Notes under the pieces: model-generated | What the model saw: only the letters and a program-made list of their open reading frames with translations | The model's database searches: none | Told to the model about the DNA's origin: nothing | Shown: one piece after another, positions 2,516 through 40,700 of the stretch | Position numbering within the stretch: position 1 is the stretch's first letter | Layout: every line of letters starts with the position of its first letter | Virus record (IMG/VR): IMGVR_UViG_3300023174_002543 | Span: 248,001 to 312,000 of that record | Reading direction: 5' to 3' (one strand) | Length of the DNA stretch: 64,000 bases | Translations under genes and position numbers: made by a program

Positions 2516-5224
2516 TTAGGCTAAACTGAATAAATCATCGAAGGTTGTGCTTACATCTGTATTCTCACGGATCTTCCAATCCAATACACCGAGTAAGTTA
2601 TCAATCTTTTCATCCACTAATGTTTGTTCCATTGCGTCATCGTCAAATGGTAAGTCTTTGAACCATTTTGGTAATCGTAGTTCATCAGTTGGATAAGCAA
2701 TACTTGTATAGCCAAGAGGATTACTTCTTAGTTTACATACAACTACTTTCATACCATCGACAATTTTCATACTATACTGGTCACCATTCATGTTACGCAA
2801 ATAGTTATAGTTGATTGCCGCACGAACGTGTCCGGGCATGTTTGTTTTGCCTTCACGCTTTTCTTTTTCGGCATACATCGTCAACTTGTTTACTGATTTA
2901 GGTGAGCCTTTAGTCCAACTTTCTTGCTCTGATAGAACACGTTTAAACTCTTTTACCTTTTCAATGACTTCTTCACGACCATAACCATCTTGAATTACCA
3001 TGCACAATACACTCATTAAGAACTCTTGCACATATTTAGGTGTGTCAGCACGTTTCAAGTCAAGACCCATAGCCTTAACATCACCCTTGTTACCATCCTT
3101 ATCCTTACGTTTACCTTCTTTATCAAAGATATTGATAGCATAGCGTTTCTTTGTAATAAAGATACTACGATCACCGATCAGTTCACGACCAGCCTTAATG
3201 ATTGAACCATTTTTGCGAGGTGTATGAAATGCACGTTCCATGAATGCAGGGAAACTTTCGTTAGTTTCTTCGGCAATACTATCGTATAACTGAATACAAA
3301 CATCTTTGTCCCAGACTAATTCACCATCGTCTATTTGTTTTTTAAGTGATGGGAGTGCAGTAAAATAGCAACTATCAGTATCACCATAAACAATAGCATC
3401 ACCGTCATGTGTATACTTGCCTGTTACAATCTCATTGATTTGGCTCATCATATGACGAACAATTTGACGACCACACAATGTAACACTTTGACCAATACGC
3501 TTGTCATAGAAACGACAATGCTCATTCAACAATGCACCATAAGCAGAATTCAATAAAATTTTACGAACCAATTGTCGCTTATCCCAATATTCACGGTCTT
3601 CATCAGTAGTTGATTCACGCAATTTCTTTTGCATTTCTTTTCTATCACTATACCAACGACTCAATAATCCTGGAACAACACCTTCAGTTTCATATGTAAA
3701 GATTGTACCATTCGCACTAAGCATCCAGGGCTTATGACTGTCAAAGATAAGTTTCCATATCTCTGCCGCACTCATTTCTTCACTACGACCATCTTCATAA
3801 TCAAGGGTAAGAATGGTACCACGTTCTTGGTTCATAATACTAGTATACTCTAATGCACCAAACAAATTTTCCCATAGAATAGCACCACCAACGTCATCAT
3901 CGCCGTCTTTGTATCTTTTCTTTTCTTGTGCTAATCTAAGACCTTTGTCTTTCATATATTGGTTTGTAAGAGTTTGCCTAACTTGTCCGATGATTGTTTC
4001 ACCTGCCATGTTGAGGGCCCTAATAACCGAGGGGTAGAGCGAGTTAATGTCAACTGCTCCGACATATTCGTGCATGCCTGTTTTGGGCGTAGCAACGAAG
4101 GCACCTGCTGCTTGTTGTTCGTCTTCATGTTCACTCCTATGTTTCTTGTCTGGAACCATTAATCCACGATTGTGGGCTTCATTAAAGATAGCCATTTCAA
4201 TCATTGCTACAGAACCCATTACTGTTGGTAACAATACTGTATTCTCATGCGCTAATTGATTAGCCAATTCTAAAAACTTTGTCTTACGATGAATCTTAAC
4301 CAACAACATAGTATCTTGTCTGTTGTATTCAATGAACTTTTTAAAGTCTTTATTATACAATTGGTCAAGAGTGCCTTCATATTGTGTTTTGTTTTCACCA
4401 ACCTCCATTTCACCGATAGCATCTAGTTTGTAACTATGGCGACTTTCATAATTGTATTTCTTATACAATTGCAAATAGTCCATATGAATACGACCTACTA
4501 AGTCATATGTTGTTTCTTCTTTACCAAAACGTTCATACTTTCTTGGCTTGGGTAATTGACCCATTAAACAAAACTTGCGTGTGTCATCTTTACTCATTAC
4601 ACGTGTGACACGATTAACCATATAAGGTATATCATATCCTTCTGAGTTCCAACCAGTCAATACATCAGCATCTTCAATCAATTGAAAGAACACATCAAAC
4701 ATTTCCTTTTCACTATTGAAAAGCATAGTGTTATTGAAACTTCTAACAATCTCCCATGCAGATTCATTACTCATGTGCTTAGGTGGGATAACTAATGTTA
4801 CCAATTGGTCTAGCCAATCTAAGTAACAACTAATTGCTGTTACTGGATTGAATGGGTCATCGGTTGGGCTAAAACCTTTTTCAGGATCAAAGTCAACTTC
4901 AATATCAAAGAAACAAGTATGAAGTTTAGGTGCATCTACCTCTAAATAGTTTTCACTAAGACAACGAAATACAACATTAACATCACTTTCAAAAAGTGGT
5001 TTGCCATGATACATTCGTCTTTCTTTTTCAAACTCAGTGCGCTTTCGTGTACTAAATCTGCTTAATGAATCTCCATAAATACTGCGAAACTTGCCTTTCC
5101 TATCTGGATAATAGAAAACATAATTTGCAGGATACTCGTTGTAATAACGCTTACCGTCATTACCTCGTTCCACTACATAAATTCTATCTTCATCCCTTGC
5201 ATGGATGGCATCTACATAACTCAA
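2516..5224 (-). CDS. gp43: family B DNA polymerase (T4 gp43-like)
   Basis: Exo motifs FDIEV, GWNSEGYDIPY, YNRQD; polymerase motifs DINSLYPS, KILLNSAYG, YGDTDS, KKRYA; no intein visible. Confidence 0.97.
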   Translation of the reverse strand: MSYVDAIHARDEDRIYVVERGNDGKRYYNEYPANYVFYYPDRKGKFRSIYGDSLSRFSTRKRTEFEKERRMYHGKPLFESDVNVVFRCLSENYLEVDAPKLHTCFFDIEVDFDPEKGFSPTDDPFNPVTAISCYLDWLDQLVTLVIPPKHMSNESAWEIVRSFNNTMLFNSEKEMFDVFFQLIEDADVLTGWNSEGYDIPYMVNRVTRVMSKDDTRKFCLMGQLPKPRKYERFGKEETTYDLVGRIHMDYLQLYKKYNYESRHSYKLDAIGEMEVGENKTQYEGTLDQLYNKDFKKFIEYNRQDTMLLVKIHRKTKFLELANQLAHENTVLLPTVMGSVAMIEMAIFNEAHNRGLMVPDKKHRSEHEDEQQAAGAFVATPKTGMHEYVGAVDINSLYPSVIRALNMAGETIIGQVRQTLTNQYMKDKGLRLAQEKKRYKDGDDDVGGAILWENLFGALEYTSIMNQERGTILTLDYEDGRSEEMSAAEIWKLIFDSHKPWMLSANGTIFTYETEGVVPGLLSRWYSDRKEMQKKLRESTTDEDREYWDKRQLVRKILLNSAYGALLNEHCRFYDKRIGQSVTLCGRQIVRHMMSQINEIVTGKYTHDGDAIVYGDTDSCYFTALPSLKKQIDDGELVWDKDVCIQLYDSIAEETNESFPAFMERAFHTPRKNGSIIKAGRELIGDRSIFITKKRYAINIFDKEGKRKDKDGNKGDVKAMGLDLKRADTPKYVQEFLMSVLCMVIQDGYGREEVIEKVKEFKRVLSEQESWTKGSPKSVNKLTMYAEKEKREGKTNMPGHVRAAINYNYLRNMNGDQYSMKIVDGMKVVVCKLRSNPLGYTSIAYPTDELRLPKWFKDLPFDDDAMEQTLVDEKIDNLLGVLDWKIRENTDVSTTFDDLFSLA

Positions 5225-5481
5225 AGTGTCTTGCCTACAGTTTCTAAAATAGTATTGAGTTCTTCGTTATCAGCATTAGTTTGTGTTAAACTTGCTTTAT
5301 GGGCAACACGAATTGCCTTTTTAAGTACACTGGGTTTTACTTCTAGTTCTTCTGCAATTGCCTTTACAGTATCGCTTAGTCCCTCGTTGAGGGTATCAAT
5401 CTCATGTAAGACAGTCATGCCTTCATTAATGAGTTGTGTTAGTTTGATTTTTTGATCGCCACTGAAAATTTTAGCTGCCAT
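5221..5481 (-). CDS. small dsDNA-binding protein (T4 DsbA-like)
   Basis: Likely start ATG 5481 (SD AGGAG); helical 86 aa with IAEELEVKPSVLKKAIRVAHK. Confidence 0.6.
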   Translation of the reverse strand: MAAKIFSGDQKIKLTQLINEGMTVLHEIDTLNEGLSDTVKAIAEELEVKPSVLKKAIRVAHKASLTQTNADNEELNTILETVGKTL

Positions 5482-5502
5482 AAATGCTCCTATAAAGTAG
5501 TT

Positions 5503-5531
5503 ATTATACATTAACTACGTAGAGAAGTCAA
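5503..5531 (-). promoter_or_regulatory. sigma70-type promoter TTGACT-N17-TATAAT for dsbA-like gene and polymerase
   Basis: -35 at 5531-5526, -10 at 5508-5503. Confidence 0.8.
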
Positions 5532-5553: not shown

Positions 5554-6486
5554 CTAACGAATGTTATTGAAGTTTACATTTACTGCATAACCCACATCTG
5601 GATTATACTTGACCAACGCCTGAACTATATTTTCAAAACTTTGCCCAAATCTCTTTACTAATTTATCTAATGCTATAGGTTGATCTTTTTCATTCATAAA
5701 TTGACCTTGATCGTCCGTATTATCAATCACAAAGTCTTCACCGTGAGTATGGTAATACTCATCAAGTTGATCACCCGAAGTTATGGGAATATCATCTATG
5801 AACACACTAAAGTATAACTGATATTTCTCACCCGTATATTGTGGTTGTTTTGGTAATAATATTACTAATGGAAAACTACTATGATAACTATCAAAATAAT
5901 TTGTTCCTGTTGTAGCCGCTGTGCACCAGCGAGTACCTTGACCATAATAACATGCCGCTTGTTTATTTTCAGGTATGATTGCTCTTACAGTATTATCTTG
6001 GTATAACTCTAATGCATTACCCTTTGCCATATTTGGATCAGTTGGGTCAGGATATTCATCTAGTACATCAAAAAAGTCTTCAAATGATCTGTACCCTAAA
6101 ATATCGTTACGTGGACTAGATATCTTTTTACGTAATACAAGGTTATAAAACTTTGTCAAATAGTCGGTTAGTGTACTGCGTAAATCTTCAAATAACGTGC
6201 CATGAATATATTTCCACTCATTAATATAAGTTTTAATTATCCAGGGAGTATATTGATTATTTCTAGTAGGATCAACATTTTCAAATGCTTGTATTACTCT
6301 TGGTAAGTAGGTTTCAGCATTATTTTGAATCTCTTGTTCTATAGCATCACTACCAGTGATAGGTTTACGTATACCCAATTGCAATATCATGGTAGTGTCA
6401 TTAACAATAGCTTGTAATAAGGCAGGACCAAACTTTTGAGTAGTTATAGCTCTGTTGTATTCAATTAAAAATTCGTTTGCTCTCAT
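5554..6486 (-). CDS. putative internal head protein with PcfJ-like region
   Basis: N-terminus MRANEFLIE (capsid-targeting-like); motif ACYYGQGTRWCTAA...NYFDSY...KYQL. Confidence 0.55.
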   Translation of the reverse strand: MRANEFLIEYNRAITTQKFGPALLQAIVNDTTMILQLGIRKPITGSDAIEQEIQNNAETYLPRVIQAFENVDPTRNNQYTPWIIKTYINEWKYIHGTLFEDLRSTLTDYLTKFYNLVLRKKISSPRNDILGYRSFEDFFDVLDEYPDPTDPNMAKGNALELYQDNTVRAIIPENKQAACYYGQGTRWCTAATTGTNYFDSYHSSFPLVILLPKQPQYTGEKYQLYFSVFIDDIPITSGDQLDEYYHTHGEDFVIDNTDDQGQFMNEKDQPIALDKLVKRFGQSFENIVQALVKYNPDVGYAVNVNFNNIR

Positions 6487-6502: not shown

Positions 6503-8002
6503 TTATTGAAACATTTCAGGGTGATCTTTACCGTATACTTTGATGTACTTACCAGCAGCCATATCCGCCAGCATTTCAATTGGGCTACCTGGATAGCTAT
6601 CACCATCTTTAATCATGTTCAATTGCATTTGACGATGATGTGTTAGTTCATGGAATATGGTACGGAAGATATCAATTAAGTTTCTGTTACCAACATATAC
6701 CCAAATATCATTACCTTTATGCACACCGGTATGATGACCTGCTTGTGCTACCTTAGTATTCTTACTAATAGTAATCTTTGGATAAGGTTTTTGCATGTTA
6801 AGTGTCTTGTATGACCACTTAATAAAGTCTTTTATCTTTTGTATATCTTCCGGGCCTTCTACGCCCTCATTCACATTACTTTTTTTTTGGGATAATGGCG
6901 TGATGTTACCTTCTGGTTCTTTAACATCACGTTGTGTTGGTGGAAAAGTTCTTTTACCGTGTTGAACTTTATTCATTGGGCGCTTTAGTGGTAATACATC
7001 ACCTTCCATCACACCTTGCTCATCTTCAGGTTTAGTAGTCAACACAAACTTCTTACCTGCATTAAATGACTTTGCCATCATTGTCCGAGCGGCTTTAGTA
7101 GCAGTTTCTTTGTTACGGTACTGATAGGGTGTGCCCATTTTATCTTTAACAATTTTACCATTAGCACGGATATACCATGTTCTTGTATCAACAGGATCTG
7201 GAACATGATATTCGTCATCTTCTCTATGACGCTTGCCTAAACTCGGGGAATTAGGATCTGCAAAACCATGACGATAACCGCTTTCCGCCACACCTTTAGT
7301 AACAATATAACCTTTGCCTTTACATTGTGGACAATTTGTAGCAACTTTTGTGCTATCTTTCTTTGTCATAGTATGATAACCTTTGCCATTACAATGTTTG
7401 CAATCGTGTGATGTGCTATCTTCCGCCACACCTAGTTTCTTATCTCTCTTTACAGCATCACTGTATGTTTTCAATACACTAGGATTCTTTTTAACAAGTT
7501 TGTTTAACTCTTTGCCACTTTCAATATCTTTTGACTTTTGAACATCTTTGGCGTATTTTTTAGTTAAGTCAGGTCTTGCCTTCAACAAATCTCTTAGCAT
7601 TTTATCATATTCATCTTCTTCTAAACTGCCTTCCGCCACACCTTGTCTTCTACGCATAATTTCATCAGTGATGGCAGCTATAATTTTTAATCCAATTTCA
7701 TCTCTTTTGATAGTTTTAATCATACGCAAAAGATCGGATGTTGAATAATTTCTATAATGAGCATGTCCGCTCTCGGTTACATCTTCTTCACCTAATCTGT
7801 TTTTGATTTTCTTAATCCAAGTATCAGGGGTATGTCCATATTTCTTAACAAACATGTCGTGTAATTTTTTACCCGTGATTTTATGCTTAACAGAAATGTT
7901 TTGCATTAAACGGTCAATAGTGTCGTAGTTGTGGCGCTTAAGTTTAGGTAATCTATTCTTAAGTTCGTCTACGGCGGATTCTTCTAATTCGTGTGCTCTC
8001 AT
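6503..8002 (-). CDS. modular putative head polyprotein (GVAE-delimited modules, CxxCxGxG Zn finger, C-terminal HExxH zincin-like domain)
   Basis: MRAHELEE leader; junctions GVAEG, GVAED, GVAES, GVMEG, NVNEG; CKHCNGKG...CPQCKGKG; RTIFHELTHHRQ...SPIEMLAD. Confidence 0.7.
   Translation of the reverse strand: MRAHELEESAVDELKNRLPKLKRHNYDTIDRLMQNISVKHKITGKKLHDMFVKKYGHTPDTWIKKIKNRLGEEDVTESGHAHYRNYSTSDLLRMIKTIKRDEIGLKIIAAITDEIMRRRQGVAEGSLEEDEYDKMLRDLLKARPDLTKKYAKDVQKSKDIESGKELNKLVKKNPSVLKTYSDAVKRDKKLGVAEDSTSHDCKHCNGKGYHTMTKKDSTKVATNCPQCKGKGYIVTKGVAESGYRHGFADPNSPSLGKRHREDDEYHVPDPVDTRTWYIRANGKIVKDKMGTPYQYRNKETATKAARTMMAKSFNAGKKFVLTTKPEDEQGVMEGDVLPLKRPMNKVQHGKRTFPPTQRDVKEPEGNITPLSQKKSNVNEGVEGPEDIQKIKDFIKWSYKTLNMQKPYPKITISKNTKVAQAGHHTGVHKGNDIWVYVGNRNLIDIFRTIFHELTHHRQMQLNMIKDGDSYPGSPIEMLADMAAGKYIKVYGKDHPEMFQ
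7002..7645 (-). repeat. in-frame direct repeats AGGTGTGGCGGAA (3 exact + 1 variant)
   Basis: Plus-strand ttccgccacacct at 7283-7295, 7421-7433 and 7631-7643; variant ccttccatcacaccttg at 7002-7018; spacings 210, 138 and 279 nt. Confidence 0.92.
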
Positions 8003-8007
8003 ACTTA

Positions 8008-8015
8008 TATTTATC
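8008..8015 (-). promoter_or_regulatory. T4-like late promoter GATAAATA, 5 nt before ATG
   Basis: GATAAATA-TAAGT-ATG(8002); the same motif recurs upstream of many structural genes in the window. Confidence 0.75.
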
Positions 8016-8028
8016 TCAAAATAAGAAA

Positions 8029-8113
8029 GTGCTCACTTTTGAGGTCCAGTAGCGAATTGGATGACTCAAGCCAGCAGCCGGCTACACATAACCCAAAGGG
8101 TCCTAAGGTGTGT
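8029..8113 (-). ncRNA. candidate structured RNA/DNA element (three hairpins, possible pseudoknot)
   Basis: GC-enriched intergenic: ACACA[CCTTAGG]ACCC-TTT-GGGT[TA]TGTGT, AGCCGG-CTG-CTGGCT, TGAG..TCCA-ATTCGCTAC-TGGA.CTCA, then AAGTGAGC that can pair with loop TTCGCT. Confidence 0.5.
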
Positions 8114-9580
8114 TTATTTTAAACCTGCGAGTGATTTAATTCTGTTTAGTGATTTAGATTCATCTGCTTGCACTGATGATACATCTTCATCAGGTAATTT
8201 GTCATTTTTATTATCGGTTGATACTGAAGGGTTACTAGATGCTAATTGAGTTTTAGCAATACCGTCTAATGTATCACCACGTTTTATTGTATAATCTTGT
8301 CCACCTACTTTAATAGTATCTCCGGCTCTAATTTTGTTAACATCTTTAATTTTATCAGCATTTGCTTGCTGAATTGACTGTGCTCCTGCAGAGCCTTTAT
8401 AACCTGAATCAGGTGATGCAACATTACGTGAATTTGGTGTAGTATTATTCGGTTCTGGTACATCTACACCTTTTTCATCAGTGTTGGGTGTGGTAGGGGG
8501 TGCAACAGCAGGCGCCGGCGGTTGTGATTTAACAGATGGCTGAACAGGTGATTGACCACCTCGTCCGGTCATACCTTTGTTTGCTGCAGCAGCATTGGCT
8601 GCACTCGTAACAGGATTTAGATTAGTAGACTTTGCAGGAGAGTTATATGCATCTCTAGCCGCATTGACTCCCATTGCACCAAAAGATATTGCAGGACCAA
8701 AACCCGGCACAAACCCGCCGGCTGCGCCTAATGCAGATATAACTGCACCTGTTCTATCACCTTTTTGATATCTTCTATATGCTTCTTCAGCATCTAATGC
8801 TATACCTGCACCGGGAATAACTCTTCCCAATACTTTTTTACCTATTGACTTTGCTCCGGCTTTTGCTCCAGCCTCTGCACCCGCTTCGACCCCTGTTGCT
8901 ACGTTAGGTCTATTAGCAGGAACCTCTTTACCCATAACTGGATCTATTCTAGTACTGGTATCTAATGCCGGTGTTTTTTGACCAAGTGTTGATGATATCT
9001 TTCCTTTAGCCGCATCGACCCCGGCATCAATGGTGGCTCTAACTTTTTTACCTGCATTGTAACCTGTATCATATGCGGCAGTATTAGCTGGTGGTGTAGA
9101 AGCCGGTTTAACAGGGACTTCTCTGCCCATAGAAGGTTCACCGGGTCTAGCTGTCCCTACATTATCATTAGGAACCGGTCTTCCGCCTACAGATGCTCCA
9201 GGTTTATCTATTCCAACTCTATTTGGTATATTTCCAGATGATGTGTTAGAGACAGGTGGTGTTGATGATACTTGTCCAGTTCTGTTATTTTTCCATACTG
9301 CTGGGTCGGAACTAGAGACGGGTGGTGTTGAAGAAGTTACACCAGTTCTTGGGTTAGTCCAAACTGATGGCTTATTATTTACTGTACGTGCAGGATCATA
9401 TCCTAGGTCCTGCATAGTTTTTATTTGACTAGGTGTTAATGGTGTATTGGTTTTATTTAACGGTACGCCTGCTTTTTCTAAATCTAATTGTGCTTTATAT
9501 ACAGCCGCTTGTCTAGGATCAGCTAAGTTTACAGTAGGCTTAGTTGCTTCGTTAATTTTATTAAATTCACTGAATCTCAT
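8114..9580 (-). CDS. putative virion/ejection protein with Gly-rich hydrophobic segment and permuted LysM-like motif
   Basis: MRFSEFNKINEA leader; Pro/Thr-rich repeats; KKVLGRVIPGAGIAL...GAVISALGAAGGFVPGFG; NKIRAGDTIKV...YTIKRGDTLDGIAK; C-terminal SLNRIKSLAGLK. Confidence 0.6.
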   Translation of the reverse strand: MRFSEFNKINEATKPTVNLADPRQAAVYKAQLDLEKAGVPLNKTNTPLTPSQIKTMQDLGYDPARTVNNKPSVWTNPRTGVTSSTPPVSSSDPAVWKNNRTGQVSSTPPVSNTSSGNIPNRVGIDKPGASVGGRPVPNDNVGTARPGEPSMGREVPVKPASTPPANTAAYDTGYNAGKKVRATIDAGVDAAKGKISSTLGQKTPALDTSTRIDPVMGKEVPANRPNVATGVEAGAEAGAKAGAKSIGKKVLGRVIPGAGIALDAEEAYRRYQKGDRTGAVISALGAAGGFVPGFGPAISFGAMGVNAARDAYNSPAKSTNLNPVTSAANAAAANKGMTGRGGQSPVQPSVKSQPPAPAVAPPTTPNTDEKGVDVPEPNNTTPNSRNVASPDSGYKGSAGAQSIQQANADKIKDVNKIRAGDTIKVGGQDYTIKRGDTLDGIAKTQLASSNPSVSTDNKNDKLPDEDVSSVQADESKSLNRIKSLAGLK

Positions 9581-9597
9581 ATATATATATTTATCTA

Positions 9598-9675
9598 TTA
9601 AACCGGGCTGTATGGATTGCGAAATTTATCGTAACCGTCATCTTCAGGGTATACAGGATAATCGTTTGGATTCAT
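9598..9675 (-). CDS. 25-aa micropeptide MNPNDYPVYPEDDGYDKFRNPYSPV
   Basis: ATG overlaps the dps stop (TAATG) and the ORF fills the gap up to the late promoter at 9595-9588. Confidence 0.5.
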   Translation of the reverse strand: MNPNDYPVYPEDDGYDKFRNPYSPV

Positions 9676-10115
9676 TATTCACGCTCAGTTTTAAGAATAC
9701 TACGAATGAACCAAGCCTTCTTACCATATAAGTCTTGTAGTTCAGCCATATAGTTAGCAATACCTTGTTGACGGTCTTCTGTTGCTTGGTCAAACATTGT
9801 AGTAACTAACTCAAGCATTTTTTCAATGTCTTGTAATGTTTCTGCAAACATTAATTGAGCACGTGGAATTTTTGTTTGGTCTTCAATAATAGTTAGTTCA
9901 GCATATCGTTGTAAACTACCTGGAGTATAACTACCTACTATTCTGATATACTCTGCAATAGTATCAATTGTTTCATTTACATCTTGGTATAGTGTATCAT
10001 AGAATTGATGATATTGTGGGAAATTACTACCTTCAATGTTCCAATGAAAGTTTTGACTTTTAATAGCAAAACTCTGTGTGCTTGCTAATAATATTTTTAG
10101 GCTATCTGATAACAT
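9675..10115 (-). CDS. dps: Dps/ferritin-like DNA-protecting protein
   Basis: QNFHWNIEGSNFPQYHQFYDTLY...IDTIAEYIR and C-terminal KKAWFIRS: Dps ferroxidase motifs. Confidence 0.92.
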   Translation of the reverse strand: MLSDSLKILLASTQSFAIKSQNFHWNIEGSNFPQYHQFYDTLYQDVNETIDTIAEYIRIVGSYTPGSLQRYAELTIIEDQTKIPRAQLMFAETLQDIEKMLELVTTMFDQATEDRQQGIANYMAELQDLYGKKAWFIRSILKTERE

Positions 10116-10170: not shown

Positions 10171-11814
10171 TTAGTGTTTCAATAACAATGTACTTAGTAC
10201 ACCTGTATCATTAGCACTTAAATCTGGCTCACCGGGTGCTACGATAACATTATATTTCATACTAGTGTTTTGGCTTTTCTTTACTGCCCACTCATCATAA
10301 CTTAATATTGAGTTAGCACTAATGCCATATTCTTTTGCTAGTCGTTGTTTTAGTTCAGGTAGTTGGTCCGGTTTTACTTGCCACTGTCCTTCAGTACCTT
10401 TGACTAAATTACCCTTAGCATCTTTAACTAATAAGTCTTGGAATAGTCCAGTTGGTACAATACGACTATTCTTAGTTTTATCTAAGTTAGGATCAGCAGC
10501 TTTAACTTGTTTCTCTTGTGAAGTGTGTGCGCCCTCACTCCAATTAATAATGAAGTTGCTTGGTTTTTGTGCAAGTGCAGCATTAGCCATTTTAGTATAA
10601 GCATAGAATTTAACGTCAGGTAAACTTTGTGCTAACTTAAATGCCAAGTCTAAGTATTCTGGACTAAAGAAGTCGCCAGCATCATGCCAGCGAATACTAA
10701 CAGAGTATCCACCCTTCTTACCTAAACTTTCTTCTTTAGCAATTTCATTTGCTAGTTGTTCAAAGAAACCATCTGGGTTATTCAATAGATATGTAATAAT
10801 ACGACCATCACTTAACCATGCGGCTTCAAACTGAATCTTACCACCTTTCATAGCAAAGCAATCTATTTTACAACTACCAGCACCCGGACATGTGTTGACT
10901 ACAATTAAGTTGTTTGTGTTTTCATCTAGTGCAAGACCAACTAATGCAGCAAAGCCAATGTTAAAGAACTGTTCTAAGTCACCGTTGCTGTGCTTCATCT
11001 TTTCATTTTGCTTTAGTAACTTTTTAGGACGAACTGCTAATGCTTGTTTAACATCTTCTTCGCGGTATCTTTTACCAGTAGCATCATAATACTTGATTAC
11101 GCTACTACGATGAATGTAAGGCATACGATATTTGTCTTGCTTTGTTTTACCAGACACATATTTCTCTTTGCCTTTTTTATCTAATTTAACTTGACCTGTT
11201 TTCTTATCAATGTCAGGAGTACCCGCAATACGTGTCATGTAGTCTTGGAATTCTTGCCCAGCAATGTCACGCTGGTCAATAGGTAGTTTAGTTGCTTCAT
11301 CTATACCCATATCTTTGTGACGTTGGGCTATTGATTCTTTAGCGCCTAATTGACTAAGTGCTTCTGCAGCTTTTGCTAGAGCCTCAGGGTTAGCAGAAGG
11401 GAATTTATTCATAATAAACTGTACTATGCTATTACTCCAAAGATACATTTTTTCTTTGTTATTCAAATCATGTTCAATTGATGGAGTAGGTACATAATAT
11501 TGTTTATTAGATTTATATTCCTGCCATAATCTGTCATATTGAGTTGAATCTACAGGAGTAACGATATTATGCATCATGCGTTGAAATGCTTCTTGATTCT
11601 TATCAATTCCGGTCTTTTTACCTAATATTCTGAGAACATAATTTTTTAATTTGTTTATTCCATTACTAAAAGCACCTTCGTCTAATTCTTCATTATCATC
11701 AAAGTCATCTGCCTCAGGATGTTGAACAAACTGGTCAACACTCATAATTTTAATGCCGCTAGGCGCACCGGGTAATTTAGGCGTTGCGCCTTCCATTAAT
11801 TCTATGATATTCAT
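10171..11814 (-). CDS. GP88-family (radical-SAM-like) domain fused behind N-terminal modules
   Basis: KQNEKM...TCPGAGSCKIDCFAMKG...IRWHDAGDFFS...FYAYTK; leader MNIIELMEG; junctions LDEG, IDEA. Confidence 0.7.
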   Translation of the reverse strand: MNIIELMEGATPKLPGAPSGIKIMSVDQFVQHPEADDFDDNEELDEGAFSNGINKLKNYVLRILGKKTGIDKNQEAFQRMMHNIVTPVDSTQYDRLWQEYKSNKQYYVPTPSIEHDLNNKEKMYLWSNSIVQFIMNKFPSANPEALAKAAEALSQLGAKESIAQRHKDMGIDEATKLPIDQRDIAGQEFQDYMTRIAGTPDIDKKTGQVKLDKKGKEKYVSGKTKQDKYRMPYIHRSSVIKYYDATGKRYREEDVKQALAVRPKKLLKQNEKMKHSNGDLEQFFNIGFAALVGLALDENTNNLIVVNTCPGAGSCKIDCFAMKGGKIQFEAAWLSDGRIITYLLNNPDGFFEQLANEIAKEESLGKKGGYSVSIRWHDAGDFFSPEYLDLAFKLAQSLPDVKFYAYTKMANAALAQKPSNFIINWSEGAHTSQEKQVKAADPNLDKTKNSRIVPTGLFQDLLVKDAKGNLVKGTEGQWQVKPDQLPELKQRLAKEYGISANSILSYDEWAVKKSQNTSMKYNVIVAPGEPDLSANDTGVLSTLLLKH

Positions 11815-37743: not shown

Positions 37744-40700
37744 TGTTTATCCTTTAATAAATTCATAATAGCATCAATTTGATCTTGCAATGACTTTATG
37801 TCTTTTGCATGATTTTCTTCTTGTTCTACAATAGCTTGTAGTGCTAATGCAGATAATTTTTCATAGTCAACTGCAAGAGTACCATCTTCTTTAGTTCTTG
37901 CTGCTTCTGGGAAATGTTCTAGTACATCGTTAGCAATTACACCAAAGTCTGCTTTTCTATGGAAGTAATTATCTGCACCACCTCTGGCGTTTAGATAATC
38001 ATCTTTCCAATCAAATAACTTACCACCAATACTAATTGCTTTTTCTAATGCGTTTGGAATAGGTCTAACATTTTCTTTGAATCTAATATCAGACCCGGCA
38101 TACGCAGTTATATTATCATATGATTGAATTGCACCATATGAATTTAGCAATGTGCTTGCAGTAGTACTGGATCCTAATGTTAGACTACCAAAAGTTACTG
38201 CACTACCAGTACCAACTGCTTGACCTATGCTTACTGTAAATGTTCCGCCGGCTGTACCAGAAACACCAACGCCAGTACCAGCACTTAATCCAACAACACC
38301 GTTGTTAGTTATGTAGCCACCGCTTACACTTAAACCTGTACTTACAATAACACCACCTAAACTAGTTGTAGTAGCTCCAGGTAATACATATGCAGCCGGG
38401 ATAACAGGTGGAGTATATTGTAATGTAGTTCCACTAAATGATAATGAACCGCTACCACTAGCAGAAAGCGTTTGAGTAGTATAAGTTGGTATCGCGGCTG
38501 GAGTGAAACTGAATCCAGTAGTAGTACTATAAGTAAATGACCCGCCACCTGACGCTGCAGCAGTTGAAACAGTAGTATTTGGTTTATTAGCAGTAATAGC
38601 ACTATAATCTAAGTTAGTTAAACTTGCACCGTTACCACTAAACAACTTAGCACTAAACGTACCATTAGGTGCACTAATACCACCATTAACTAAGTTAACT
38701 GCCCCAGTAATATTAGCACCACCTTGAACTGTCATTGAAGTATTATTAGGTGATACTGTGATTTGAGTACCTGAACCGAATCCCGTCCATCCTGGATCAC
38801 TTGCTATTGCAGTACCGGTGCCCGCTCTACCTATAGTTACACTTGTTGAGGTAGCTGAATGTACTGTATAATCAGTATTGTTTAACGAACTAAATCCAGT
38901 AAGTATTATTAGTTGTCCTTGAACAAAGGGAGTAACTGCCTGTTGACCAAAGTTAATGGTGACACCTAATCCAACACCATTATATGTGTAATTAGTTGCT
39001 TGAATACCACTACTACCAACTGCATGTATGCCAGTAATAGTATGGTTGCCACCTATCCTTACTACACCCGATGCCAACAATGCATTGCCACCTGCATCAC
39101 CTCTTAATGTAACGACACCACCGGTGATACTACTCACCGCAGTGATATTACCAATGTTTGCATTACCTTGAACAGTAATTATACCTTGAACACTTAATGT
39201 TGATTGATGCGTGATTGACGCAGTACCTGTAATAGTCCCGGGATTGCCTATGTAGGCATAGCTAACTGTAGTTGTTGTGGGAGTACCGGTAACTACTACA
39301 CTACCGTTTAACGCAGCAGGAGTAAGTCCGGATACAGTTATGATTTGACCTACTGTGAAGGGTACTGTAGCAACACCTAACAAAGGTTGTGAATTAAATG
39401 TCAACGTTACTACATCGCTAGCCCACGCTGCAGTTGCATTAGTAATTCCTGCACCAGTACCTGCAGGAGCTGCATATGGATTAGTTACAAGAACTGCCTG
39501 TGTGCCACCTACTCTTGTGTTGCCTGCTACAAAATGATTATTTGAAGTGTAACTATTACCAGTAACTGTAAGTGAATTTCCGGCTTGCGGTGCAGTACCA
39601 CCTACTACACCGATGCCACCTACAATATGATTAGTAGATGTATAGCTATTACCATTAACACCAAATGCATTACCAGCACTTAGCGACCCGGCACCGACAT
39701 AGTGACTTGAAGCACTAATACCACTGTCCATTCTATGTGTACCTGATGTATATGCATTTCCATTAACACCAAATGCATTACCTGCGGATAATGAACCAGA
39801 ACCTACATAATGATTAGATGAACTTATACCGGCTGACATAGTATGTAAGCCTGATGTATATGCATTACCATTAGCAGTCAATACATACCCTGCCTGAGCA
39901 CTTCCCCCGCCTATAACACTAAATCCACCTACGGTATGATTGCCACTAACGTTTGCATTTCCCGGTGTTACTATGTTACCTAAGTTAGCGGTTCCACCTA
40001 CAAAATGAGTACCCGATATATAACCGTTACCATTAGCAGTTAATATATAACCTGACTGGCGAGTGCCTCCACCTATAACAGTAAATCCACCCACTGTTTG
40101 ATTAGTTGATACAAATAGATTTCCGTTTGTAGTTAATGCATGACCTGCTTGTGCTGAACCTCCGCCTACTATACCAGTTGTAAATAATGCATTACTCATA
40201 CTTGCAGTACCGGCTATAGTATGGTCACCTGATGTATAACTATTACCCGCGACAGTCAATGTATTACCTGCTTGAGCAGCAGTACCGCCAATTACATGAG
40301 TTCCGGTTGTTACACCATAACCCATAGTATGAGTATTAACAGTATATGCACTGCCATTAGCAACTAATACATTACTTCCTACTGTTGCGCCGGCTGCACC
40401 TATATAATGACTATTACCAGTTACACCATCCTGCATTATATGTGTACCTGATGTATATGCATTTCCATTAACACCGAATGCATTGCCTGCTGATAATGTA
40501 CCAGCACCTACATAATGACTTGAAGCACTGACACCACTATCCATTCTATGTGTACCTGAGGTGTATGCATTACCATTAACACCAAATGCATTACCCGCAA
40601 CCAATGCACCGCTACCTACATAATGACTTGAGGCACTTATACCACTAGCCATTCTGTGTGTGCCTATTGTTCTACTATTGCCACCTACATAATGGTCAGA

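What the first reader, a model, noticed from the sequence alone, without database searches (positions are those of the whole stretch)
8029..8113. Unassigned structured element directly upstream of the GVAE-array gene
Seen: about 85 nt of GC-enriched intergenic sequence in a genome whose gaps are short and AT-rich. The minus strand folds into three consecutive stems (ACACA/TGTGT with ACCC/GGGT; AGCCGG/CTGGCT; TGAG/CTCA with TCCA/TGGA), and loop TTCGCT can pair with downstream AGTGAG as a pseudoknot. It is not a tRNA or a simple terminator and I cannot match it to a known family. Inference: ribozyme, riboswitch-like RNA, processing signal or ssDNA recognition structure. Its position next to the cassette-array gene may or may not be functional.
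Basis: partly seen in the sequence, partly recalled or inferred. Interest (0 to 1): 0.68.

Follow-up and report, generated by a model that had tools for sequence, protein, structure and literature searches.

The report
Phage RNA with loops antisense to rRNA
The flagged 85-nt gap holds a real, strongly conserved three-hairpin RNA found once per genome in a large group of uncultured jumbo phages; it matches no known RNA family, and its invariant loops are exact antisense copies of universally conserved ribosomal RNA segments, which suggests that it targets the ribosome.

Summary
Window 8029-8118 (minus strand) is a structured RNA. On its own it folds no better than shuffled sequence. However, about 160 distinct homologues in IMG/VR phage contigs show compensatory changes in all 15 modelled base pairs.

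It is not a tRNA, it matches no Rfam 15 family, it is not a canonical terminator and it is not coding. It occurs once in the 367-kb phage genome. In 136 of 149 loci it starts at the stop codon of the gene upstream. It always lies upstream of a dsbA-like gene plus family-B DNA polymerase module. The GVAE gene follows it in only 31 of 156 loci and has its own late-promoter-like motif, so the link to that gene is incidental.

New finding: the nearly invariant loops are full-length exact antisense matches to E. coli rRNA.
- Loop 1 matches 23S 1920-1931, extended to 1919-1933 or 1914-1930 in variants.
- Loop 3 matches 23S 1929-1937, or 1968-1976 in an alternative loop type.
- Loop 2 matches 16S 519-527.

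Sense, reversed and complement controls match only 5-8 nt.

Best reading (about 0.45): an rRNA-directed antisense RNA sitting in a 3' UTR. Binding and effect are untested. The genome also carries 33 tRNAs and a bS21 gene.

The parts
8029..8118 (-). Whole element as matched by the covariance models: 5' flank, P1 with L1 and P1a, P2 with L2, P3 with L3, and the tail.
   Evidence: R1 scores 57.3 bits, E 2.5e-14. R2 scores 73.2 bits as the only real hit in the 367-kb genome; the next hit is 12.9 bits.
8114..8116 (-). UAA stop codon of the upstream gene 8114..9580 (488 aa, LysM domain). It directly abuts the 5' strand of P1.
   Evidence: The same arrangement holds in 136 of 149 loci.
8084..8113 (-). 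P1 hairpin. The 5' strand is ACACA at 8113-8109 and the 3' strand is UGUGU at 8088-8084. It encloses L1 and P1a.
   Evidence: All four modelled P1 pairs show compensatory changes, and 92% of cells are paired.
8099..8108 (-). L1, CCUUAGGACC. Together with A8109 it is an 11-nt exact antisense match to 23S rRNA 1921-1931. The family consensus is the 12-mer ACCUUAGGACCG, matching 1920-1931.
   Evidence: The block is 94-100% conserved per column.
8091..8101 (-). P1a, an optional inserted hairpin (ACCC UUU GGGU). It is absent in the short versions and is longer in others, where it tends to resemble the antisense of helix 69.
   Evidence: mean local score 5.6 against antisense H69, versus 4.2 sense and 3.3 reversed.
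8069..8083 (-). P2 hairpin (AGCC/GGCU) with the 7-nt loop L2, GGCUGCU, at 8079-8073. With its closing pair, CGGCUGCUG is a 9-nt exact antisense match to 16S rRNA 519-527.
   Evidence: P2 is 99% paired and all 4 pairs covary. Antisense match. Loop variants.
8040..8068 (-). P3, a two-part hairpin (UGAG/CUCA and UCCA/UGGA) with loop L3, AUUCGCUAC, at 8057-8049. UUCGCUAC is an exact antisense match to 23S 1930-1937. Most homologues have UUCGCUACC, matching 1929-1937.
8031..8039 (-). Invariant single-stranded tail, AAAGUGAGC. It could pair with L3 as a pseudoknot. It is followed by an A/U-rich, G-poor tract at 8028-8018.
   Evidence: 116 of 117 sequences found without requiring the tail still carry AGUGAGC. 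Composition after the tail.
8008..8015 (-). GATAAATA, resembling the T4 late promoter, 5 nt before the ATG (8002) of the GVAE gene 6503..8002. It separates the element from that gene.
   Evidence: Genome-wide, 34 of 71 such sites lie within 40 nt upstream of an ORF start.
2516..5511 (-). The conserved downstream module: a dsbA-like 96-aa gene (5221..5511) and a family-B DNA polymerase (2516..5224).
   Evidence: The dsbA-like gene lies downstream on the same strand in 122 of 156 loci and the polymerase in 117 of 156; neither is ever upstream.

Best explanation
The element is a non-coding RNA of a new family. It is carried once per genome by a clade of uncultured jumbo phages that have T4-like replication and late-gene features.

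It is transcribed with the genes as the 3' untranslated end of the operon that precedes the dsbA-like / DNA polymerase module. It may be cut out as a small RNA.

Three covarying hairpins serve as scaffolds that present invariant single-stranded loops. I propose that these loops act as antisense 'seed' segments. Loop 1 (plus the optional P1a hairpin) and loop 3 would dock on the junction strands around helices 69 and 71 of domain IV of host 23S rRNA (nt 1914-1937, or 1968-1976 in one loop-3 variant). Loop 2 might dock on the 530 loop of 16S rRNA. The RNA would therefore be ribosome-directed.

It would act either on exposed subunit-interface rRNA of free subunits or on nascent, not yet folded rRNA. 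The likely effect is on subunit joining, on assembly, or on tethering of ribosomes.

Shown here: the structure, the conservation, single copy, the position, the strand, and the exact complementarity with its statistics.
Inferred: transcription and processing, actual pairing with rRNA, and the physiological effect.
For: Structure and family.

Complementarity: five conserved blocks have full-length exact antisense matches in a real E. coli rRNA operon.
- The 12-mer matches 23S 1920-1931.
- The 15-mer variant matches 23S 1919-1933.
- The 9-mer of loop 3 matches 23S 1929-1937.
- The 9-mer of the type-3 loop 3 matches 23S 1968-1976.
- The 9-mer of loop 2 matches 16S 519-527.
Sense, reversed and complement controls reach only 5-8 nt. 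The chance of one exact 12-mer in 4,566 nt is about 2.7e-4, and of a 9-mer 1.7e-2. In addition, the loop 1 and loop 3 targets abut each other.

Matches of 11 nt or more among about 160 versions: the antisense ones pile up at 23S 1914-1933 (more than 100 sequences) and 16S 517-529 (61). The sense ones are six singletons, which is the chance level.

The loop 1 and loop 3 segments are not collinear with an antisense copy of 23S. A different loop-3 type matches another strand of the same junction. This argues for selection on pairing rather than a captured rDNA scrap.

Most loop 1 variants keep pairing through G-U: CCUUAGGGCC, CCUUGGGACC, CUUUAGGACC, UCUUAGGACC.

By the Rfam LSU consensus structure, the targeted stretches 1925-1934, 1936-1944 and 1963-1971 are largely unpaired junction strands.

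The 18-mer target is identical in all 86 rRNA copies found in 68 genomes of another phylum.

The phage also carries 33 tRNA genes and a ribosomal protein bS21 gene, so it invests in translation.
Against: - There is no expression or binding data; no RNA run was listed.
- Much of the target is folded or buried in mature ribosomes, so duplexes of 9-17 bp would need unfolding.
- The three loop 2 variants found change the central base, giving a mismatch to 16S C522. The commonest loop 1 variant, CCCUAGGACC, gives an internal mismatch to A1928.
- In many versions the 5' part of loop 1 is paired inside an extended P1.
- The invariant tail has no significant rRNA match: 7 of 8 nt, the same as the controls.
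- The loops are so invariant that co-variation with targets cannot be tested.
- Cultured relatives have a plain terminator at the syntenic site. A simpler 3'-end role is therefore possible.
Confidence: 0.45

Rival explanations
1. A cis-acting 3'-end element: an unusual terminator, processing site or stabiliser that closes the upstream operon and insulates it from the dsbA-like / polymerase promoter. The conserved loops would bind a phage or host protein, such as an RNase, RNA polymerase or a termination factor. The rRNA complementarity would have no functional meaning.
For: - It abuts the upstream stop codon in 136 of 149 loci and is followed at once by promoter-like sequences.
- At the syntenic spot, phages RaK2 and Vibrio 2.275.O have ordinary hairpin plus T-run terminators.
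- The tail is followed by an A/U-rich, G-poor tract.
- A loop 3 / tail pseudoknot would end just before that tract.
Against: - There is no canonical terminator in the window.
- In L124 and L148 a separate canonical terminator follows the element, so the element itself is not the terminator there.
- Terminators need no invariant loops of about 35 nt in total.
- It occurs only once per 367-kb genome, although the genome has many operon ends.
- It leaves a complementarity with a chance probability of about 1e-7 unexplained.
Confidence: 0.22
2. A guide RNA for a protein effector, in the manner of snoRNA guides or RNA-guided nucleases and recombinases. It would direct modification or cleavage of host rRNA, or action on the rRNA genes.
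For: There is bipartite, non-collinear antisense to adjacent rRNA segments presented in loops, as in guide RNAs and group II intron EBS loops. The targeted site, 23S 1930/1931, is from my own knowledge a classic target of rDNA-specific mobile elements (L1931 group I introns; the R2 site in 28S).
Against: - No reverse transcriptase, TnpB-type or IS110-type gene was found in the genome.
- No box C/D or H/ACA motifs are visible in the consensus.
- No protein gene is constantly adjacent other than the dsbA-like gene.
- A partner protein was not searched for systematically.
Confidence: 0.12
3. A self-cleaving ribozyme or ligand-binding aptamer. The invariant loops would form a tertiary core, and the rRNA matches would be coincidence.
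For: Many invariant unpaired nucleotides are held by covarying stems, as in ribozymes and aptamers. Phage genomes are rich in small ribozymes (own knowledge).
Against: - No Rfam ribozyme or riboswitch model matches, even at E<=10.
- The only Watson-Crick complementarity of more than 4 pairs that I found between the conserved blocks (by eye, no tool) is loop 3 with the tail, so a tertiary core would have to rest on other contacts.
- Loop 3 is swapped between four unrelated sequences while the rest stays fixed, which is odd for a catalytic core.
- There is no expression platform and no constant regulated gene.
Confidence: 0.08
4. A DNA-level or single-stranded-DNA element of the replication module: an origin, a primosome site or a protein landing site.
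For: Its position 5' of the DNA polymerase module is fixed, and it is single copy.
Against: - Covariation maintains hairpins on one strand, with G-U but not A-C in P2 (16:0).
- It is always co-oriented with transcription.
- It has no repeats or iterons, and it is GC-richer than its surroundings rather than an AT-rich unwinding region.
Confidence: 0.05

Closest known systems
mRNA-rRNA tethering signals (Shine-Dalgarno / anti-SD; the calicivirus TURBS motif pairing with 18S helix 26)
   Same: Short conserved single-stranded segments, presented by flanking structure, that are Watson-Crick complementary to conserved rRNA. They lie next to a stop codon or start region.
   Different: Those pair with small-subunit rRNA over 4-9 nt and act on initiation or re-initiation. 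Here the main targets are in 23S domain IV and span 12-17 nt. The element lies after the stop codon, with a promoter before the next gene. Binding is untested.
Ribosome-binding 3' elements of plant RNA viruses (3' CITEs such as the BYDV BTE and the TCV tRNA-shaped structure)
   Same: A compact multi-hairpin RNA in the 3' UTR just after an ORF. Some carry a stretch complementary to rRNA or bind ribosomal subunits directly.
   Different: Those belong to eukaryotic RNA viruses and have unrelated sequence and fold. No such element is known to me in phages.
snoRNA-type guide RNAs (box C/D, H/ACA) and group II intron EBS loops
   Same: Two separate antisense segments recognise adjacent parts of a conserved rRNA or exon sequence. 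The order of the segments is not that of a simple antisense copy.
   Different: There are no C/D or H/ACA boxes, no intron domains, and no associated protein genes. snoRNA-type guides are not known in bacteria or phages.
Kissing-loop antisense RNAs (ColE1 RNA I/RNA II, CopA/CopT)
   Same: Hairpin loops serve as seeds for antisense pairing. The P1a hairpin in long versions resembles the antisense of hairpin H69, so a loop-loop contact is conceivable.
   Different: Those are encoded opposite their target. Here the presumed target is a host rRNA encoded elsewhere.
Unnamed candidate structured RNAs catalogued from IMG/VR (PMC10690425)
   Same: Same data source and the same kind of object: an intergenic motif with covariation in uncultured phages. 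This motif could be one of the more than 10,000 listed there.
   Different: The main text mentions no 23S or rRNA complementarity and no motif at this locus. The lists are not held here, so identity could not be checked.

Membership tests
Any Rfam 15 family | A score to a covariance model at or near its gathering threshold. | tested here: not met
   0 hits in the whole window at gathering score. The only hit at E<=10 in 7950-8200 is a 15-bit snoRNA noise hit outside the element. 0 hits at E<=1 in 7 homologous loci.
tRNA / tmRNA | A cloverleaf with anticodon arm and T-loop that ARAGORN can detect. | tested here: not met
   ARAGORN finds 0 genes in the window. The same program finds 33 tRNAs elsewhere in the genome.
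Intrinsic (Rho-independent) terminator | A G+C-rich hairpin followed directly by a U run. | tested here: not met
   There is no minus-strand terminator-like site at the element. Only 2 of 155 loci have one just downstream, and it is separate from the element.
Riboswitch / cis-regulatory 5' leader of the GVAE gene | The element lies inside the 5' UTR of a constant regulated gene and has an expression platform. | tested here: not met
   A late-promoter-like GATAAATA lies between the element and the ATG. The GVAE-type gene follows in only 31 of 156 loci. The element abuts the upstream stop codon.
Small self-cleaving ribozymes (hammerhead, twister, twister-sister, pistol, hatchet, HDV-like) | The conserved catalytic core of a known class. 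| tested here: not met
   No Rfam ribozyme model matches.
Small self-cleaving ribozymes (hammerhead, twister, twister-sister, pistol, hatchet, HDV-like) | Self-cleavage activity. | not testable with these tools
   This needs an in vitro cleavage assay.
rRNA-directed antisense or guide RNA (working class, not an established phage family) | Conserved unpaired segments of 9 nt or more that are exactly complementary to rRNA, beyond what controls give. | tested here: met
   Full-length antisense matches of 12, 15, 9, 9 and 9 nt, against 5-8 nt for the sense, reversed and complement controls. The matches cluster at 23S 1914-1937.
rRNA-directed antisense or guide RNA (working class, not an established phage family) | Physical pairing with rRNA or binding to ribosomes. 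| not testable with these tools
   No RNA runs were listed. A duplex-energy scan was uninformative.
Box C/D or H/ACA guide RNA | Box C (RUGAUGA) and box D (CUGA), or an H/ACA box, placed next to the antisense segment. | tested here: not met
   The consensus of model R2 contains none of these boxes (read by eye).
RNA-guided mobile elements (group II intron, IS110 bridge RNA, TnpB omega RNA) | An associated reverse transcriptase, DEDD recombinase or TnpB gene. | tested here: not met
   PF00078, PF01548 and PF07282 find nothing in the 367-kb genome, while the control genomes respond.

The most novel reading that the evidence does not exclude
A phage-encoded, tRNA-sized RNA that base-pairs through hairpin loops with universally conserved rRNA: the helix 69 / helix 71 junction of 23S, and perhaps the 16S 530 loop. 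It would thereby disable, tether or re-programme host ribosomes. This would be a class of ribosome-directed antisense RNA not described in bacteria or their viruses, and it would work on any host because the target sequences are invariant.
Probability: 0.35. Interest if true: 0.95.

Novelty: categorically new. Interest (0 to 1): 0.82.

Why it matters
If the pairing is real, this would be the first natural trans-acting RNA in the bacterial world that addresses the ribosome through Watson-Crick complementarity to core 23S and 16S sequences. It would add an RNA-based way of taking over translation to the phage-encoded tRNAs and ribosomal proteins already known.

Because the target sequences are identical across phyla, the RNA could be tested directly on E. 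coli ribosomes. It could also become a tool for probing the subunit interface or ribosome assembly.

Even if the rRNA idea fails, this is a large new family of structured RNA with exceptionally clear covariation. It has a fixed genomic position in a poorly known clade of jumbo phages, and it has modular, swappable loops.

Tried and rejected
1. Single-sequence folding: not significant on either strand.
2. Similarity searches in cultured phages:
   - blastn with the flanking 4 kb found nothing.
   - blastn with the element found only chance hits.
   - The best of these, in Salmonella phage SPN1S, is not recognised by model R2.
   - The nearest cultured relatives by polymerase (Phosso, Atu_ph07, Vibrio 2.275.O, RaK2) lack the element.
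3. Prokaryote genomes: 12 pattern hits, of which only 2 have the structure. Both are on MAG contigs labelled Bacteroidota; the rest are at the chance level. I do not take this as a host assignment. Many loci show TTGACA/TATAAT promoters and AGGAG ribosome sites, which are unlike Bacteroidota.
4. RNA-seq: no run was listed.
5. RNAduplex of the whole element against whole rRNAs: too slow, and it gave meaningless long duplexes. Dropped.
6. Tail AAGUGAGC against 23S 1099-1105, and loop 2 against 23S 1070-1076 (GTPase centre): only 7 nt, no better than the controls. Rejected as evidence.
7. Many 8-9-nt matches to rRNA occur in both orientations by chance. Only matches of 11 nt or more, or full-block matches, were counted.
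8. I remembered nt 1933-1941 and 1968-1976 as the two strands of one helix. The Rfam consensus structure does not support this, so the idea was withdrawn.
9. Loop-3 types 2 (AGUCGUGC) and 4 (CCGGGAAU): only 6-7 nt of antisense to 23S 1964-1969 / 1938-1945, or to 16S sites. Suggestive at most.
10. Literature: five searches found no phage RNA with these loops.
11. The large protein searches, structure prediction and complex prediction were not used, because the question concerns an RNA.

Full report
**What is at the coordinates**

The window is bases 248001-312000 of a 367,104-bp IMG/VR phage record that CheckV rates as complete. Its G+C content is 36.5%. All neighbouring genes run on the minus strand.

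On that strand the order is:
- a 488-aa LysM-domain gene (8114..9580), which ends with UAA at 8116-8114;
- the flagged stretch;
- GATAAATA at 8015-8008;
- five bases later, the ATG (8002) of the 499-aa 'GVAE' gene (6503..8002), which carries a DnaJ-type zinc ribbon and an HExxH motif.

The stretch is GC-enriched at 0.49.

On its own the sequence folds no better than shuffles, with z = -0.42. ARAGORN finds no tRNA. Rfam 15 finds nothing at gathering score or at E<=10.

**Homologues and structure**

A search with the GVAE protein fetched 27 related IMG/VR loci. nhmmer and blastn found the element just upstream of that gene in 13 of them.

The aligned copies showed four invariant blocks (CCUUAGGACC, GGCUGCU, AUUCGCUAC, AAGUGAGC) separated by stems that change in a compensatory way. 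Three further patterns, each leaving one block free, also hit the limit. Together they gave about 160 distinct versions.

Two covariance models were built and searched:
- A model built from 7 sequences found exactly one hit in each of 100 loci, about 1 Mb in all.
- On the resulting alignment every one of 15 pairs has changes on both sides.
- 89% of cells pair, against 32-43% with slid partners.
- The covariation score is 0.70, against 0.04-0.08 slid and 0.20 shuffled (0 of 500 shuffles reach it).

G-U exceeds A-C 72:32 overall and 16:0 in P2. The folded strand is therefore the transcribed strand of the surrounding genes.

The region is not coding. Most versions have stops in all frames, and lengths from 78 to 113 nt show no multiple-of-3 pattern.

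The architecture, from 5' to 3', is:
- a 5' flank, AAAGAAC;
- P1, closing a loop L1 of 10-13 nt, with or without an inserted hairpin P1a;
- P2, with the 7-nt loop L2;
- a two-part P3, with loop L3;
- the single-stranded tail.

L3 comes in four unrelated sequence types, while everything else stays fixed.

**Copy number, distribution, position**

A second model built from 100 sequences finds one copy in the whole 367-kb genome, at 73 bits. The next candidate scores 12.9 bits.

Among one genome each of 185,579 prokaryote species the pattern hits 12 times. Only two of these have the structure, both on MAG contigs. The others are chance matches.

The polymerase is 42-49% identical to those of the cultured jumbo phages Phosso, Atu_ph07, Vibrio 2.275.O and RaK2. 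None of them has the element. At the syntenic place, RaK2 and the Vibrio phage carry ordinary hairpin plus T-run terminators.

Position relative to neighbouring genes:
- In 136 of 149 loci a same-strand ORF ends within -4 to +20 nt of UUAGG. In 38 of them the UAG inside L1 is itself the stop codon. The upstream genes belong to several unrelated families.
- Downstream, a dsbA-like 86-aa gene follows on the same strand in 122 of 156 loci, at a median of 1.1 kb. It matches phrog_12534 and phrog_639, with a weak Pfam Phage_DsbA hit.
- The family-B DNA polymerase follows in 117 of 156 loci.
- Neither gene is ever upstream.

Immediately after the tail come promoter-like sequences. They are either TTGACA-17-TATAAT before the dsbA-like gene, or GATAAATA a few bases before an ATG. 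Genome-wide, 34 of 71 RATAAATA sites lie within 40 nt upstream of an ORF start.

The GVAE-type gene is the direct neighbour in only 31 loci. Its link with the element is therefore an accident of gene insertion at this spot, not a functional coupling.

**The unexpected feature**

From memory, L1 and L3 looked like the antisense of 23S rRNA around position 1930. I checked this against the annotated rrnH operon of E. coli K-12.

| Block | Antisense match |
|---|---|
| Consensus L1, ACCUUAGGACCG | 23S 1920-1931, 12 of 12 |
| Frequent L1 variant with a CUA extension | 23S 1919-1933, 15 of 15 |
| Some long L1 versions | 23S 1914-1930, 17 nt |
| Commonest L3, UUCGCUACC | 23S 1929-1937, 9 of 9 (80 sequences) |
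| Type-3 L3, ACGCCAUUC | 23S 1968-1976 (up to 11 nt from 1966) |
| L2 with its invariant closing pair, CGGCUGCUG | 16S 519-527, 9 of 9 |

The same blocks taken as sense, reversed or complement match only 5-8 nt.

Among all matches of 11 nt or more, the sense ones are six singletons. That is what chance predicts. The antisense ones pile up at these two places.

The chance of an exact 12-mer in 4,566 nt is about 2.7e-4. The chance that a second 8-9-mer falls next to it is about 3e-4. The L1/L3 relation to 23S is therefore not accidental.

The 18-mer target is identical in all 86 rRNA copies seen in 68 genomes of another phylum. Laboratories use the same antisense sequence as a hybridisation oligonucleotide for this rRNA region.

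In the Rfam consensus structure of bacterial LSU rRNA:
- helix 69 is 1906-1911/1919-1924;
- helix 71 is 1945-1950/1956-1961;
- the stretches 1925-1934, 1936-1944 and 1963-1971 are largely unpaired junction strands.

The targets are thus mainly the single strands that join helices 69 and 71 in domain IV, plus the 3' strand of helix 69.

The inserted P1a hairpin tends to resemble the antisense of helix 69. Its mean local score is 5.6, against 4.2 for the sense and 3.3 for the reversed sequence. This is only a trend.

**Weighing the rRNA idea**

For:
- the statistics above;
- the L1 and L3 segments are not in the order of a simple antisense copy, and another L3 type matches a different strand of the same junction, which speaks for selection on pairing rather than a captured rDNA fragment;
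- most L1 variants keep pairing through G-U;
- the phage otherwise invests in translation, with 33 tRNA genes and a bS21 gene.

Against:
- nothing shows that the RNA is made or binds;
- the mature target is folded;
- the three L2 variants change the central base, and one L1 subfamily has an internal mismatch;
- in many versions part of L1 is paired inside an extended P1;
- the most invariant block, the tail (116 of 117), has no significant rRNA match.

I therefore rate L1/L3 against 23S as a solid sequence fact with a plausible functional meaning. I rate L2 against 16S as suggestive only (p about 0.02, and its variants are unfavourable). I rate the tail as unexplained.

**Alternatives**

- A 3'-end or terminator role fits the position and the terminators in cultured relatives. 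It does not explain the invariant loops, the single copy, or the two loci where a canonical terminator follows the element.
- A guide RNA for a protein effector is conceivable. However, no reverse transcriptase, TnpB or IS110 gene is present, and no snoRNA boxes are seen.
- A ribozyme or aptamer cannot be excluded without experiments. No known class matches, and a swappable L3 is unusual for a catalytic core.
- A DNA-level origin is disfavoured by the strand-specific G-U pattern.

**Verdict**

The element is a new, widespread, single-copy structured RNA of a clade of uncultured jumbo phages. Its best current explanation is an rRNA-directed antisense RNA (confidence about 0.45).

Five literature searches found no described counterpart. 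It may sit unnamed in a catalogue of more than 10,000 candidate viral RNAs (PMC10690425), whose lists I could not read.

Noticed in passing
window 9598-9675 (-), and upstream of the element in about 12 other loci (e.g. L013, L015, L041, L048): A conserved 25-codon mini-ORF, MNPNDYPVYPEDDGYDKFRNPYSPV, overlaps the stop of the Dps/ferritin-like gene in a TAATG arrangement. In other phages this same mini-ORF ends right at the element. In the window, the LysM gene with its own GATAAATA motif sits in between.
   Followed up: partly
window 6503-8002 (-), and homologues in L002, L003, L005, L006, L008, L013: The GVAE gene has a conserved N-terminal domain (MRAxEL..ESAVxELKxRLPKL..DYxTIDxLMQ), repeated GVAE-type junctions, a CXXCXGXG zinc ribbon and a C-terminal HExxH. 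Homologues range from about 190 to 887 aa, as if cassettes were gained and lost. The V-A-E spacing recalls prohead-protease cleavage sites (hydrophobic-X-E) known from T4-like phages (own knowledge), so it may be a polyprotein.
   Followed up: partly
window 8008-8015, 9588-9595 and 13 further minus-strand sites; genome-wide 71 sites: RATAAATA, like the T4 late promoter TATAAATA, lies 4-5 nt or 17-25 nt before ORF starts at 34 of 71 sites. The 4-5-nt class would give leaderless or nearly leaderless mRNAs.
   Followed up: partly
G000:C1:155234-170028 (outside the window): A cluster of 33 tRNA genes covering nearly all amino acids.
   Followed up: no
G000:C1:210495-210650 (-), outside the window: A phage-encoded homologue of ribosomal protein bS21 (PF01165, 51 bits, 77-aa open frame).
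   Followed up: no
window 5554-6486, 6503-8002, 8114-9580 (-): Three neighbouring genes begin with a similar N-terminus (MRANEF, MRAHEL, MRFSEF). The motif also recurs at the start of many genes next to the element in other loci. It may be a shared targeting or packaging signal.
   Followed up: no
window 39500-42330: Dense families of direct repeats with periods of 51, 84 and 108 nt (up to 15 copies), all multiples of 3. This is most likely a very long repeat-built fibre or beta-helix protein.
   Followed up: no
L130, L097, L098 (downstream of the element): In some relatives the family-B polymerase ORF is only 713-744 aa and starts inside the exonuclease domain. This suggests a split gene or an inserted mobile element.
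   Followed up: no
L046, L128, L166 (P1a insert): The long P1a insert contains CCUAAGG, identical to 23S 1924-1930. It can pair perfectly with L1 within the RNA, like an internal copy of the presumed target. In L166, L1 carries A-to-G, which still allows G-U pairing.
   Followed up: partly
L073, L083, L096, L143 and others with type-2 loop 3: The type-2 loop with its stem, (G)UAGGAGUC, is antisense to 16S 337-345. P2 versions ending in GCCU(C) make CUGCUGCCU(C) antisense to 16S 348/349-357. These are the two ends of the EUB338 probe site and lie in collinear order. The matches are only 8-10 nt, and similar chance matches occur, so the significance is unclear.
   Followed up: partly
window 9675-10115 and 10171-11814 (-): A Dps/ferritin-like gene (PF00210, phrog_3636) and a gene with a GP88 domain lie just upstream of the locus. 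A Dps-like gene also neighbours the element in L072 and L145.
   Followed up: no
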